Assembly: GCA_053919585.1 (NCBI GenBank)
Contig: CM132807.1
Source of the DNA: Euprymna scolopes
Lineage: Eukaryota
Direction: 5' to 3' (one strand)
Length of the DNA: 64,000 bases
The position numbers were made by a program, and so were the translations under genes. The notes under the pieces are model-generated. The model made no database searches and was not told the origin of the DNA. It was given only the letters and a program-made list of their open reading frames with translations. Below are positions 39,864 to 46,339 of the stretch, piece after piece (the stretch's first letter is position 1; each line of letters opens with the position of its first letter).

Positions 39864-39949
39864 TTCTAATAATGATAGCTATTTGTTTCATATTCATTCC
39901 TCAAGATAATTATTTTTTATTATATATTAAATATGAAAGAAATAACATT

Positions 39950-40056
39950 TAGTCAGGGAGCAGTTGTCATCTACTTCAAGAATTTTGCCAAAATTGAAAT
40001 TTCACTTGGATATGATCAAGAACATCACAACGAATAACTTTCAACTTGTCTTCCAA
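39950..40056 (+). repeat. Academ terminal inverted repeat (3' end relative to the ORF)
   Basis: TAGTCAGGGAGCAGTTGTCAT-CTACTTCA..TTTGCCAAAATTGA..TTTCACTTG...CTTTCAACTTGTCTTCCAA is the reverse complement of 45823-45939. Confidence 0.9.
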
Positions 40057-40642
40057 CTATTAGCATCATATTTCATCACGAGAGGGCGCTTTTCCAAAAT
40101 GGCTACGAAAAATCATGAGAACATAGTAGAAACTTGATTTTTTGCCAAAATATCAGGACACTGGGTTGTCTTTCAATGATTTTCTCAACATATAGTGAAT
40201 GCCCCCATATTTTAAAACCAAAATCACTGGATACAGGGTAGACAAAGGGCGCTTTTGCCTAAGATGGCCTCCAAAATAATGCACAGCCCATAGGAATTAA
40301 GGGGAGCGTTTGGTTCAAAACTGAAATTGCCTTGTGGGCATTCATACTCCTATTAGTACTATATGGTAGGCTGGGTTACCAATGTTGTACAAAAAGAAAC
40401 TTGATACCCCCCAATTTGGGGACGTGAGGGGGCAAAAAAACAATTTTCAGCCCGATTTGGCATAATGTTCTAAATCTTATAACTAGAGACACTGGGCCAA
40501 TTGAGATGAAAAAAATATATGGGTACACTATAGAGACTGCTCTAGATAGTAATTTGCGGCAGAGAGATAATTTACATTTTCAAGTATTCTTAATGAAAAA
40601 AAATATTATATATTAGGTATAGTTATATTGTACATTTCTATG

Positions 40643-43600
40643 TCATTCCATGTCATCTTCACTAATGTCATCTATTTCTTCATTGTAGTCCTCTGAATTT
40701 TCACAGCCATCACCACATCCACAAGCATCAGAGCACATTAGTGAATTCTTATGGCATCCACATCTGTTTGTCATACAGGAACTGCGGCAGGAACATTGAC
40801 GCAGCTCTAACAATGCTTCTGGTGCTGGCACATTAATATTTAGTACAGGTACCAAATAACCATCCTGCCTCTCCCATGAAAAAATAGTTGCTGGTGGGAT
40901 GCTAGGGCATGGTTTGGTGGATAGATTCCACACCAAAACCATGTAGAATGCCCTTTGTGTGTGCGGTATGAGTTCCTAATGTAGGAGGCAACTGTCTTCC
41001 TTCCTTGGCATTTTGTGCAAAGAGTGCCCATCTCAGTTCTTTTATACTCTCTGATGTCACTTTTCCAGAAGGTTTATACAAAAGGCATATGTAGCGTTCC
41101 ATCTGGTTGACAAACCACTCTGGAACATCAGTACTCTTTCCAAATGCTGCAAAGGCATCAAGCAGGGGGGTATCACATGCCATAAATGCCTTGAAGTGAC
41201 TTGTGACTCCTTTCCCAGCAAATGCACCAGTGTTGTCAGTCCCTATGAAGGCATACCATCCCACTAATCCTTTTGCTTTCTTAATGCAGAGCTTATTATA
41301 GCTTTCAAATATTGAAATACTCTCTGTATTATTCCTAACAAAGCACGTCATTGGCGGGATTAATGAATAGTTTCCAGTAACACAGACATCTGTATCTACT
41401 GAAAATATATCCACTTTAGCATTTTCATCTTTGTGATTGACGTCCACAGCATTAAGCAGTACCAACTGGTCACCTTCCCCTAAGCAGTGACTTCCTTCTG
41501 ACATTTGTGGCATGGACACAACATTGGCAAGGTGGCAATTAGCTTCTATGATTGTGTCGTACATAACAAGAACCTTCTTTGACTTTCCTTGGTAGTGTGC
41601 TAGTACTTTCTGTGATAGATATTTGGTGAGCTCAGCCTTTGTCTGGATATGTGATAGAAACATCCTTATATTCTTTATGTCTGTACTGTCATTAACATGA
41701 TAATGGATAGCTGCTGTTTTCTTGGTTCTCTTGTCTCTTGTGGTTTGAGAGATCCTGGTCGATATTGGTCAAAGACAACACGTATTTCATCATATTGTGC
41801 CCCCATATCTTCAACCATTTCAACAAATTTGTTTGCAAAATTTAAAGCAGTAAATTTCTCGCATGTTTTTGTTACCATGTTGACAACACACATTGCATCA
41901 ATTATTAAAATTGCAGTTTGGGTGCTATTTGCTTGATCTGCTGGGGGCTGGCTTACATCTTCTGGAATAGGGAGATCCATGACCAACTTTACTAATTGGG
42001 ATTTTCCAGAAAGCATAATCATTGAACCATCTGGCTGGAAATTTGATGGTGGGGCACTGTCAAATTCATATTCTCCTATAGCATCTTTCACTTCAAATTC
42101 AGGTCATCTTTTGCCTATAACCAATAGTCTGGAAAGCAATTTCCTCTCTTGTTTGACAGCAACTAATTGGCCCTTCACCTTTGTTTTGACAACTGGACCA
42201 ACATTCTTGAAATAGGAATGTTATTTTTCTTCTGGGGATCCCAAAAGCCAACCGTCTTCTCAACCATCCTACTCGTCACAAACTTCCCCAGTGCCTCTCT
42301 TCCTAATTTATCTCTTTGTTCAATATTCTGACTGACTTCAATTGGCGGTACAGCATATGTCATCAAGTTAAACATGTCACTTTCTTCAAATGGATTTCCT
42401 AGTTTGTTGATGGCATCCACAAGTTTTGCAGCATTTTGTATCAATCTAGTACCTTTTCCACCTGTTAATTCGTGGTGAAGTGATGTTGCCTGTCTACCTT
42501 CTATTCCAGCATAGTCTTTGAACTCAATGACTCTGCTTAATGTAGGAGCAACGATAAAGTATTTGTCTAATGCTGACTCATTTCCTGTAATGCCGATGAA
42601 ACCCCCTTTGCATTTCATTTTCTTATGTTCTTGTTCAATCGCATGATCTGGATCAATTGCTGTAAATGATGCATTGTGTTTAGCAATGGTAAAGTTTCCT
42701 TCATTAAGAAATTTCCATAGATCAGGATCATTTGTCTGCATCTCAAACATGTCAGCAACATATAGCGTACCCCATCGTCCATAGTTAAACTGATCATGTG
42801 CATGGAAGTAGGACAACAACTCTTCCATTTTTGCCAAATGAAGCTTCCAATCACCTTTCCTTGTAGCAGCAATGAACATCAGCAAAACCATTACTTGGTT
42901 CATGTAGTTTGTCAGGAATTTTTAAATACCTTTCCCATTTTCTTGCCATTCCTCCATCCGTTTGAAAGTATCATTTGTCATCAGCTGATGGTGCATAAGG
43001 CTAATTTCTTTCTGAAATTCTTCTGTATCCTTGCTTGGTTCATTGATGTATGACTTAAATGATTGGACAATTTTCTTGATACCTGGTGTGATTTCTGCTG
43101 CCATTTTCTGAGAACACGGTCTGAAAGAACAAATGATGCAATGCTATGAGTGTCACTGTATGTGCTTCTATTCCTCTGTACACATGTCGCCCATCTAATA
43201 TTTGCCTCACTGTCGCTGGTCCATAAAGGTCTGACTCTTTCCAAGCTATATTAATGCCACTGCCTTCAACATACTTCCCTAAACATTTGAGAGCAGTCAT
43301 AGTAGTGTGCAAACTCCCAAGTCTAATGCACCACTGCGATTTGTAATCTTTCAATCTTACTGCACGATTATACAAGTCGCCATCTAGTGTAATCACAGGC
43401 CTGCAATCATCTCCCATAGTCATGCAATTAATCTTCTGTGCCTGCATTAGAATAGTCAAGAGTACAGGCCACTCTGTTGGACTTCTCCTGTAAAGAGGGG
43501 CACATATTCCAACATTCCAAATTGGTGTTTTCTTAGTGATAAGTGAATTATAGGTTGACCACGTAGGACATTGGAGATTCTTTTTCTGAGTACAGACTTT

Positions 43601-45598: not shown

Positions 45599-45822
45599 AT
45601 TGCCGTTGTTCTGGTTACTATTGCTCCAAACACAAATCTAAGGCCAGCTGCAGCCCTGCAAAGGAAAAATACAACATTTAGAACATTGCAATATAATAAA
45701 CTTAAGATAATCAATAGAAATAAAGACATTTAGGGTTATTTTGGGGATTTTAGGTATTTTTGTCAGTAAATTAGGCAGCCAATTTGAAAATCGCTCTCAC
45801 GCGCTTAAAACGGCTCTGAAAT

Positions 45823-45939
45823 TTGGAAGACAAGTTGAAAGTGATTATCTATGATGACCTCCAACACATACAAGTGAAAAATCAATTTTGGCAAACTTTC
45901 TGAAGTAGCTATTAATTAATGACAAATGCCCCCTGACTA
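45823..45939 (-). repeat. Academ terminal inverted repeat (5' end relative to the ORF)
   Basis: TTGGAAGACAAGTTGAAAG...CAATTTTGGCAAA..TGAAGTAG..ATGACAAATGCCCCCTGACTA. Confidence 0.9.
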
Positions 45940-46339
45940 ATTCATATTATGGCTATTTAGTGCATTATATTTTTACATACCTAGAAGTGAATTACATTAT
46001 ACACTTATATAGTATCTATTAAGTCTATTACTTAATATATTCATATCTACATATGCGTTGGGGAAAGTTCTGTTAATGATTATGTATGTATTCTATTAAA
46101 CGTTTGTATGTAGAGGTGTCCTATGTTTCCCGCTACTGTTAATGTTTAGCTTTTGTCTTATTAGTCACTTGACGCTGTGTTTGCCTGTTTTTTTCTCGTA
46201 ATTAGATCTTGATTTTATTTTTATACTTTTGGCTTTATTTTAATACCCTTAACACTCGTAAGATTTCTTATATTCAGTTTTCTATTTGTATATTTATTTT
46301 TAATTTATCTTTTTCTTAATTTTATCTGATATATTTACA

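What the first reader, a model, noticed from the sequence alone, without database searches (positions are those of the whole stretch)
39947..45942. Structurally complete Academ-type transposon with exact ends and a reconstructable ~1650-aa protein
Seen in sequence: TAG..CTA termini, ATT TSD, ~110-bp TIRs, and eight abutting minus-strand ORFs that join into one protein after about 6 single-base shifts and 2 stops. Established: Academ elements have TAG..CTA ends and 3-4 bp TSDs and encode a transposase with an XPG-like nuclease and a Cys-rich finger. To my knowledge their mechanism has not been characterised experimentally. Inference: this copy is far better preserved than the other DNA transposons here, so it may be an undescribed family whose active consensus can be rebuilt.
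Basis: partly seen in the sequence, partly recalled or inferred. Interest (0 to 1): 0.75.

Follow-up and report, generated by a model that had tools for sequence, protein, structure and literature searches.

The report
Dead copy of young AcademX transposon
This is a complete but broken copy of a young, multi-copy jumping gene of the known Academ type, in what is probably a squid or cuttlefish genome; it is ordinary in kind, but sister copies with unbroken genes exist and this insertion is absent from another sequenced allele, so the family has moved very recently.

Summary
Window 39950-45939 is a 5,990-bp element with TAG..CTA ends, imperfect TIRs of about 115-160 bp and an ATT target-site duplication.

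- **Family:** each end gives about 80 candidate loci in the 5.9-Gb genome, and nearly all of the 40 scored per end are 98-100% identical. Sixteen of 17 paired ends carry perfect 3-bp duplications of varied sequence.
- **Window copy:** it is dead, with 6 frameshifts, 2 stops and 3 in-frame deletions.
- **No reconstruction needed:** two copies in the same genome carry an intact 1,658-aa ORF, and four more intact variants sit in public assemblies.
- **Protein:** two N-terminal CCHC-type cysteine/histidine motifs; an RNase-H-fold DDE core (best structural match P-element transposase, Z 10.6); a FEN/XPG/Xrn-fold nuclease with seven invariant acidic residues; and a LIN54-like CXC domain.
- **Classification:** a transposase fused to a nuclease, a 3-bp duplication and no helicase fit the published AcademX definition. 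I could not compare with Repbase or Dfam.
- **Recent movement:** a DNA run holds the empty site with a single ATT. One deletion derivative sits on two chromosomes with different duplications.

Verdict: a new member of a known kind. Earlier notes of this scan report other AcademX families on other DNA of this genome, with the same conclusion.

The parts
39947..39949 (.). Left copy of the 3-bp target-site duplication (ATT)
   Evidence: The empty allele in DNA run X1 has a single ATT.
39950..45939 (-). Whole element (5,990 bp; intact sister copies are 6,017 bp). The gene is on the minus strand.
   Evidence: Ends are shared by the scored copies at 98-100% identity.
39950..40063 (.). Left terminal inverted repeat; it starts TAGTCAGG. 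Weaker pairing continues to about 40104.
45816..45939 (.). Right terminal inverted repeat; it ends CCTGACTA. It lies in the 341 bp upstream of the ORF start, where the promoter and 5' UTR are presumed to be.
40643..45598 (-). Decayed transposase gene with 6 frameshifts, 2 stops and 3 in-frame deletions relative to the intact 1,658-aa ORF of the sister copies
45083..45589 (-). Two N-terminal CxxC...HxxC motifs, putative zinc fingers (residues C4/C7/H60/C63 and C113/C116/H169/C172 of the intact protein)
   Evidence: Columns invariant or nearly invariant in the 12-sequence alignment A1. The fold was not modelled.
42634..44207 (-). DDE (RNase-H-fold) transposase core, from D466/D469 through D740 to D986/E990, with a disordered acidic insert and a large helical insertion domain
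   Evidence: Invariant residues. Model pTM 0.75. Best structural match is P-element transposase, Z 10.6 over 360 residues, followed by ISCth4, Hermes and RAG1, with retroviral integrases and Tn5 further down the list. A relative, P0071, passes the Pfam DUF6589 cut-off.
41235..41899 (-). FEN/XPG-like 5'-nuclease domain (D1237, D1280, E1379, D1381, D1406, D1408, D1461). In the window copy the neighbouring E1378 is changed to G.
   Evidence: Model pTM 0.83. Foldseek gives probability 1.00 to Xrn2, Rat1, Xrn1, T5 flap endonuclease, T4 RNase H, FEN-1, Rad2, XPG and EXO1. The acidic residues are invariant.
40697..40795 (-). C-terminal CXC (tesmin/TSO1/LIN54-like) cysteine-rich domain
   Evidence: The profile of A1 hits the LIN54 CXC domain, PDB 5fd3, at E 7e-4. 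Pfam TCR gives weak hits.
45940..45942 (.). Right copy of the target-site duplication (ATT)

Best explanation
Window 39950-45939 is a recently inserted, now inactivated copy of a young family of autonomous cut-and-paste DNA transposons of the Academ superfamily, AcademX lineage. The host is a mollusc, probably a decapodiform cephalopod.

The family's single intronless gene encodes a 1,658-aa protein with four modules:
- two N-terminal CCHC-type motifs, presumed to recognise DNA or the element ends;
- an RNase-H-fold DDE transposase core with a large helical insertion domain;
- a FEN/XPG-type metal-dependent 5'-nuclease;
- a CXC DNA-binding domain.

**Shown here.** The exact ends, the 3-bp duplication, the multi-copy young family, the intact sister ORFs, both nuclease folds with conserved acidic residues, the empty-site allele, and the spread of a deletion derivative.

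**Inferred.**
- The protein binds the TAGTCAGG-headed inverted repeats.
- The DDE site cuts the 3' ends and joins them to a target cut with a 3-bp stagger.
- The fused FEN-like nuclease handles the other (5') strand or a flap intermediate, so the element is fully excised. This is the same logic as the TnsA/TnsB pair of Tn7.

The window copy can at most be moved in trans.
For: - **Ends, TIRs and duplication:**
- **Copy number:** 82-83 candidate loci per end; all 40 scored for the left end and 34 of the 40 for the right end are 98-100% identical.
- **Duplications:** 16 of 17 end pairs have perfect 3-bp duplications of varied, AT-rich sequence.
- **Intact copies:** two in this genome, L061:800-5776:- and L062:442-5418:+, each 1,658 aa. 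Four more intact variants are in public assemblies, and all keep the catalytic residues.
- **Decay pattern:** window copy versus intact copy L061 gives 42 nonsynonymous to 13 synonymous changes, as expected for neutral decay. The two intact copies differ by 15 to 13.
- **DDE fold:** P-element transposase Z 10.6, then ISCth4, Hermes and RAG1, with retroviral integrases and Tn5 further down the list.
- **Nuclease fold:** FEN, XPG and Xrn family.
- **CXC domain:**
- **One gene, no helicase:** only one ORF of 150 aa or more, and no helicase hit.
- **Published definition:** AcademX makes 3-4-bp duplications and encodes a nuclease; AcademH makes 9-10-bp duplications and encodes a helicase (PMC10045372, citing Kojima 2020). 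Curated bivalve Academ elements average 5,565 bp (PMC10294476).
- **Empty site:** a contig of DNA run X1 runs from the left flank to 39949 and continues with window 45943 onward. Its depth is 11.6, beside an occupied-junction contig at depth 7.
- **Mobilised derivative:** the deletion derivative with breakpoints 2264/4633 sits on two chromosomes with duplications ATA and AGG.
- **Second family:** a family only 25-33% identical in protein has the same TAGTCAGG..CCTGACTA ends and a 3-bp duplication, TAT.
Against: - No Academ reference sequence (Repbase, Dfam) could be compared, so homology of the DDE core to named Academ transposases rests on architecture, duplication length and size.
- Pfam finds no transposase or XPG family above its cut-off in this protein itself.
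- Foldseek found nothing for the DDE model. The VIA-align match at Z 10.6 is for a 781-residue multi-domain model.
- Transcription is barely shown: 16 reads in one polyA run. The RNA-library contigs reach the exact termini and foreign flanks, so DNA carry-over or read-through is possible.
- Every role in the proposed mechanism is an inference. To my knowledge no Academ element has been studied biochemically.
Confidence: 0.85

Rival explanations
1. The element belongs to another DDE superfamily, such as P-like, hAT-like, CACTA or PIF/Harbinger, and merely acquired a FEN-like nuclease domain.
For: The best structural neighbour of the DDE core is P-element transposase. CACTA and PIF also make 3-bp duplications (established knowledge, not tested here).
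Against: By established knowledge, P and hAT make 8-bp duplications, CACTA ends in CACTA, and PIF targets TWA and needs a second ORF. Here the duplications are 3 bp of varied sequence, the ends are TAGTCAGG, and there is one ORF. No Pfam transposase family of those superfamilies is hit. A fused nuclease with a 3-4-bp duplication is the published AcademX definition.
Confidence: 0.08
2. The family is extinct. The intact ORFs are recent relics, and no transposition occurs today.
For: Very few RNA reads in the one raw polyA run. Most copies are broken; open frames range from 188 to 1,369 codons apart from the two intact copies.
Against: Copies are up to 99.9-100% identical over 1.8 kb. The insertion is polymorphic, with an empty allele. 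Six distinct intact ORFs keep all catalytic residues. Contigs of the intact sequence type occur in oligo-dT RNA libraries.
Confidence: 0.35
3. The repeats spread by segmental duplication or are an assembly artefact, not by transposition.
For: Some copies do sit in duplicated DNA. Two copies on C37 share an identical flank, and three copies lie within 50 kb on C32.
Against: Sixteen of 17 pairs have different flanks and different perfect 3-bp duplications on many chromosomes. An exact empty site with a single ATT exists.
Confidence: 0.01

Closest known systems
AcademX lineage of the Academ superfamily (Kapitonov & Jurka 2010, Repbase Reports; Kojima 2020, Mobile DNA 11:15, as cited in PMC10045372 and PMC5751038)
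   Same: One large protein that joins a DDE transposase to an XPG/FEN-type nuclease. It has a 3-bp duplication, TIRs, a length of about 6 kb, no helicase and an animal host.
   Different: No tested feature differs. The family itself may be unlisted, which I could not check. The host is probably a cephalopod, a group where one survey reported Academ as almost absent (PMC10294476).
AcademH lineage (Kojima 2020)
   Same: Presumably a related DDE core. A distant relative of this protein passes the cut-off of Pfam DUF6589, a family that one preprint lists among domains enriched in pathogenic fungi, in a study of a rust fungus. Rust fungi are also where fungal Academ elements are most abundant.
   Different: AcademH encodes a helicase and makes 9-10-bp duplications. 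This element has no helicase and makes 3-bp duplications.
Drosophila P-element transposase (PDB 6p5a)
   Same: The closest solved fold for the DDE core plus helical insertion domain (Z 10.6, 360 residues aligned).
   Different: 6% sequence identity. By established knowledge, P makes 8-bp duplications, has a THAP domain and a GTP-binding insertion, and has no fused second nuclease.
FEN1 / XPG (Rad2) / EXO1 / Xrn / T5 flap endonuclease 5'-nuclease superfamily
   Same: Same fold. Seven invariant acidic residues have FEN-like spacing, in the pattern D..D..ExD..DxD..D (the comparison with FEN1 numbering is from my own knowledge).
   Different: Here the domain is embedded in a transposase. Sequence similarity is below Pfam thresholds, and the substrate is unknown.
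Tn7 TnsA/TnsB two-nuclease excision
   Same: Works like it only, and by inference: one nuclease for the 3' ends with strand transfer, and a second unrelated nuclease for the 5' strand.
   Different: TnsA has a restriction-enzyme fold and is a separate protein. There is no homology.

Membership tests
Academ superfamily, AcademX lineage | Transposase core homologous to reference Academ DDE transposases (Yuan & Wessler 2011 profile; Repbase) | not testable with these tools
   No Repbase, Dfam or CENSOR is on hand, and Kojima 2020 and Yuan & Wessler 2011 are not held. At fold level the core is a DDE/RNase-H transposase.
Academ superfamily, AcademX lineage | XPG/FEN-type nuclease encoded with the transposase | tested here: met
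   Foldseek gives probability 1.00 to Xrn2, T5 FEN, FEN-1, Rad2, XPG and EXO1. The acidic residues are invariant. The nuclease lies in the same 1,658-aa ORF.
Academ superfamily, AcademX lineage | 3- or 4-bp target-site duplication | tested here: met
   Sixteen of 17 pairs have perfect 3-bp duplications. L062 has GTC, and the empty site has a single ATT.
Academ superfamily, AcademX lineage | Terminal inverted repeats, and a long (about 5.5-kb) element with one large ORF | tested here: met
   The size is comparable with curated bivalve Academ elements (PMC10294476).
   The termini are present here and in a second family of this genome that is 25-33% identical in protein. No literature source for this as a defining trait could be read.
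AcademH lineage | Encodes a superfamily II helicase and makes 9-10-bp duplications | tested here: not met
   No helicase domain and only one ORF. The duplication is 3 bp.
P superfamily | 8-bp duplication and a THAP DNA-binding domain | tested here: not met
   The duplication is 3 bp and there is no THAP hit. Only the fold resembles P.
PIF/Harbinger and CACTA (the other superfamilies with 3-bp duplications) | DDE_Tnp_4 or Transposase_21-type transposase; TWA target or CACTA termini | tested here: not met
   No such Pfam hits. The termini are TAGTCAGG and the duplications vary in sequence.

The most novel reading that the evidence does not exclude
The family is transposing today in a cephalopod, and its natural intact copies are the first Academ elements that could be tested directly. 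In that case the fused FEN-like domain would prove to be a second, essential strand-cleaving nuclease, making this a single-chain two-nuclease transposase. The conserved TAGTCAGG terminus would be the superfamily's recognition and cleavage signature. This would also overturn the published impression that, among molluscs, Academ is nearly confined to bivalves.
Probability: 0.3. Interest if true: 0.55.

Novelty: new member of a known kind. Interest (0 to 1): 0.33.

Why it matters
To my knowledge, Academ is one of the least studied cut-and-paste superfamilies and has no biochemistry. Here there is a family with naturally intact genes, exact ends, a proven 3-bp duplication, a polymorphic insertion and deletion derivatives that have been mobilised. 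That gives a ready substrate and enzyme pair for asking what a FEN/XPG-type nuclease does inside a transposase.

It also bears on distribution. The genome gives more than 1,000 candidate loci for Academ-like proteins. One survey reported Academ as almost restricted to bivalves among molluscs (PMC10294476).

As a genome feature it is ordinary: one dead copy of a known kind of transposon.

Tried and rejected
- **Pfam** on the window ORF pieces and on the intact protein gave only weak TCR/CXC and DUF6589 hits.
- **phmmer against PDB** gave nothing. The profile search found only the LIN54 CXC domain.
- **Foldseek on the 781-residue DDE model** gave nothing. VIA-align over all representative chains was needed.
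- **Papers not held:** Kojima 2020 and Yuan & Wessler 2011. 'Academ' with 'XPG' as whole words found no paper.
- **Genome letters:** I fetched three single loci instead.
- **The listing of cluster members** gave no names or taxa.
- **Run X2** laid no contigs.
Natural intact copies made that unnecessary.
- **Rejected readings:** a host gene family (exact TIRs, duplications and an empty site argue against it) and spread by segmental duplication alone.
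Full report
**1. Observation**

The sequence is as described. TAG lies at 39950-39952 and CTA at 45937-45939, and ATT flanks both ends at 39947-39949 and 45940-45942. The repeat finder reports inverted arms at 39941-39970 / 45919-45948 (30 nt, 83%) and at 39971-40063 / 45816-45908 (93 nt, 78%), offset by a 10-nt indel. In an intact sister copy the two ends align over 155-163 nt at 73-74%. A chain of minus-strand ORFs fills 40643-45598.

**2. It is a family, and the boundaries are exact**

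The genome (G000) has 5.9 Gb in 925 contigs. The first 301 bp of the element give 82 candidate loci there, and the last 300 bp give 83. All 40 scored for the left end, and 34 of the 40 for the right end, are 98-100% identical. In the 60 loci I fetched, every left end starts TAGTCAGGGAGC, and all but two right ends finish GCCCCCTGACTA; those two differ by one base.

Sixteen of 17 end pairs have perfect 3-bp duplications with different sequences: AAG, TAC, ATA, TAA, TCA, TAT, TAG, AGG, CTG, TTA, TTC, TTT and others. The one exception is a 1.4-kb rearranged copy. The first two duplicated bases are A or T in 27 of 30 and 26 of 30 left flanks, a mild AT preference in a genome that is roughly two-thirds AT (about 30-39% G+C across most of the window). 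Full length is 6,017 bp, and the window copy is 5,990 bp.

**3. Intact sister copies exist**

I searched the genome with one ORF piece. It found about 27 close copies. Two of them have an open frame of 1,671 codons without stops, at C13:53503576-53509592 and C1:24126597-24132612. I fetched both.
- L061 has a single ORF of 1,658 aa at 800-5776 on the minus strand.
- L062 has a single ORF of 1,658 aa at 442-5418 on the plus strand.
- Neither has another ORF of 150 aa or more.
- Their duplications are TCA and GTC.

The gene is therefore intronless and the element carries one gene. Public assemblies hold four more distinct full-length 1,658-aa variants, P0001, P0173, P0174 and P0176. They differ from L061 at 22-24 residues and keep every putative catalytic residue.

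**4. How the window copy is broken**

Against the two intact copies, the window copy has 55 private substitutions and 12 indel events. Within the gene the lesions are as follows.
- Frameshifts at 44609 (-1), 44033 (+1), 43097 (-2), 42214 (-1), 41747 (-4) and 40969 (-2).
- Stops at 42924 (codon 894, CAA>TAA) and 42106 (codon 1168, AGA>TGA).
- In-frame deletions at 44890, 42525 and 41379-41384.

Codon changes against L061 are 42 nonsynonymous to 13 synonymous, as expected for neutral decay. The two intact copies differ by 15 to 13, which hints at constraint, but the numbers are small. I built no consensus and repaired no frame.

**5. What the protein is**

Twelve relatives at 23-84% identity align over the full length, with many invariant columns.

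*(a) N-terminus.* There are two CxxC...HxxC motifs: C4/C7/H60/C63 and C113/C116/H169/C172. These are putative zinc fingers. Their fold was not modelled.

*(b) Residues 330-1110.* The model has pTM 0.75.
- Foldseek found nothing.
- VIA-align against 48,161 chains put P-element transposase first (6p5a; Z 10.6, 360 residues aligned). ISCth4, Hermes and RAG1 followed at Z 6-7, with retroviral integrases (Z 5-6), Tn5 transposase (Z 5.7) and a RAG-like transposase (Z 5.3) lower in the list.
- The invariant D466/D469 lie on the first strand of the fold.
- D740 lies just after the fourth strand.
- D986/E990 lie on a helix that follows a long helical insertion.
- This is the layout of a DDE triad with an insertion domain.
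- A disordered acidic insert at about residues 555-680 is not conserved.
- A distant relative, P0071 (27% identity), passes the Pfam cut-off for DUF6589 over this region. The nearest Atlas cluster also carries DUF6589.

*(c) Residues 1150-1658.* The model has pTM 0.83. Foldseek matches at probability 1.00 to Xrn2, Rat1, Xrn1, T5 flap endonuclease, T4 RNase H, FEN-1, Rad2, XPG and EXO1. Seven invariant acidic residues (D1237, D1280, E1379, D1381, D1406, D1408, D1461) have the spacing of the FEN active site. That last comparison is from my own knowledge of FEN1.

*(d) C-terminus.* There is a CXC domain. The profile hits the LIN54 CXC DNA-binding domain at E 7e-4.

**6. Classification**

Kojima 2020, as quoted in PMC10045372, divides Academ in two. 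AcademX encodes a nuclease and makes 3-4-bp duplications. AcademH encodes a helicase and makes 9-10-bp duplications. Curated bivalve Academ elements average 5,565 bp (PMC10294476).

This element meets every feature I could test:
- a fused FEN/XPG-type nuclease;
- a 3-bp duplication;
- TIRs;
- a length of about 6 kb with one ORF;
- no helicase.

The one feature I could not test is direct homology to reference Academ transposases, because no Repbase or Dfam is on hand and the two key papers are not held. Other superfamilies fail on duplication length (P, hAT), on termini or target (CACTA, PIF), or on transposase family.

A second family from the same genome supports a shared signature beyond one family. 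It is L063, 6,162 bp, with an intact 1,622-aa ORF and 25-33% protein identity. It has the same TAGTCAGG..CCTGACTA ends and a 3-bp duplication, TAT.

**7. Recent activity**

I laid public runs on window 39800-45799.
- **Empty site.** In DNA run X1 a contig runs through the left flank to 39949 and continues for 226 letters. Its reported 30-letter consensus equals window 45943-45972, which is the empty site with one ATT. Its depth is 11.6. A contig across the occupied junction (39920-39977) has depth 7. The insertion is therefore polymorphic or heterozygous. X1 may be the assembled individual.
- **Mobilised deletion derivative.** The derivative with breakpoints 2264/4633 occurs on C39 and C4 with duplications ATA and AGG.
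- **Second shared-breakpoint derivative.** The derivative with breakpoints 1923/4315 occurs on three chromosomes. I could not check its duplications.
- **Near-identical copies.** Some copies are 99.9-100% identical over 1.8 kb.

Evidence for transcription is weak.
- A raw polyA run (X24) gave 16 reads. All had the first mate on the + strand, which would be sense for the gene in a usual stranded library.
- Contigs from oligo-dT metatranscriptome libraries (X17) cover the whole element in the intact sequence type. They also reach the exact termini and foreign flanks, so DNA carry-over or read-through is not excluded.

**8. Host and breadth**

RNA runs that hold the element are labelled 'mollusc metagenome' and 'invertebrate metagenome'. 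The genome has hits on at least 46 large contigs. Earlier notes of this scan call it a squid/cuttlefish-type genome. I did not verify that.

The exhaustive representative search found 8,601 clusters at E of 0.001 or better and 460 at 1e-30 or better. Named relatives at 34-59% identity come from a crinoid, a sea spider and a weevil. Within this genome, more than 1,000 candidate loci encode Academ-like proteins at 24-38% identity, many with frames of 1,300-1,600 codons. This sits badly with the statement that Academ is almost restricted to bivalves among molluscs (PMC10294476).

**9. Mechanism**

- **Shown:** two nuclease folds with conserved metal-binding residues in one chain; exact ends; a 3-bp staggered target; mobilisation of a deletion derivative in trans.
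- **Inferred:** the DDE site cleaves the 3' ends and performs strand transfer. The FEN-like domain cleaves or trims the 5' strand or a flap, so the element leaves as a double-strand cut. The zinc-finger motifs and CXC domain bind the inverted repeats.

I put about 0.85 on 'AcademX-type autonomous family, window copy dead'. I put about 0.3 on the family being active today together with the two-nuclease model being right in its essentials.

**10. Verdict**

It is a new member of a known kind. Its value is as a natural, intact test case for an unstudied superfamily. Earlier notes of this scan (s1-280714, s1-295603) reached the same kind of conclusion for other Academ families on other DNA of this genome. 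Note s1-272139 is a reading of this same stretch.

Noticed in passing
L063:477-6638 (G000:C6, about 91794476-91800637): A second Academ-like family, 6,162 bp, with an intact 1,622-aa ORF (L063:1159-6027:+). Its protein is only 25-33% identical to this family's, yet it has the same TAGTCAGG..CCTGACTA termini and a 3-bp duplication (TAT). Its TIRs are much longer (284 nt at 91%) and contain internal subrepeats.
   Followed up: partly
whole genome G000: More than 1,000 candidate loci encode Academ-like proteins at 24-38% identity, many with open frames of 1,300-1,600 codons. This conflicts with the published view that Academ is almost restricted to bivalves among molluscs (PMC10294476), if the host is a cephalopod.
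   Followed up: partly
G000 C39:53513222-53516868 and C4:105834577-105838223; also copies on C26, C21 and C16: Internally deleted non-autonomous derivatives of about 3.6 kb have identical breakpoints on different chromosomes (2264/4633 twice; 1923/4315 three times). Shorter ones also exist, at 1.4 kb and about 0.9 kb. The 1923/4315 junction also appears in an RNA-library contig, as the joint 41851>44241.
   Followed up: partly
G000 C37:32804968 and C37:34478716; C32:15909490-15957435: Two copies on C37 share an identical 3' flank in opposite orientation, and three 3.7-kb copies lie within 50 kb on C32. These look like segmental duplications carrying copies of the element.
   Followed up: no
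proteins P0010, P0011, P0014, P0015, P0018: Relatives at 34-59% identity are annotated in a crinoid (Anneissia japonica), a sea spider (Nymphon striatum) and a weevil (Ceutorhynchus assimilis). Two of the Nymphon models bear host-gene names (organic cation transporter, TRP-gamma) and are probably gene-model chimeras. The patchy spread could reflect horizontal transfer.
   Followed up: no
window 57899-58780 (+): A 293-aa ORF with a reverse-transcriptase domain (RVT_1, E 1.9e-27), which is a retroelement fragment.
   Followed up: partly
window 28889-29946 and 39815-39858: Very AT-rich tandem repeats (periods 25, 31 and 93, and TA runs) lie in the 28-30 kb bin where G+C dips to 0.15. A (TA)n microsatellite lies about 90 bp left of the insertion site.
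   Followed up: no
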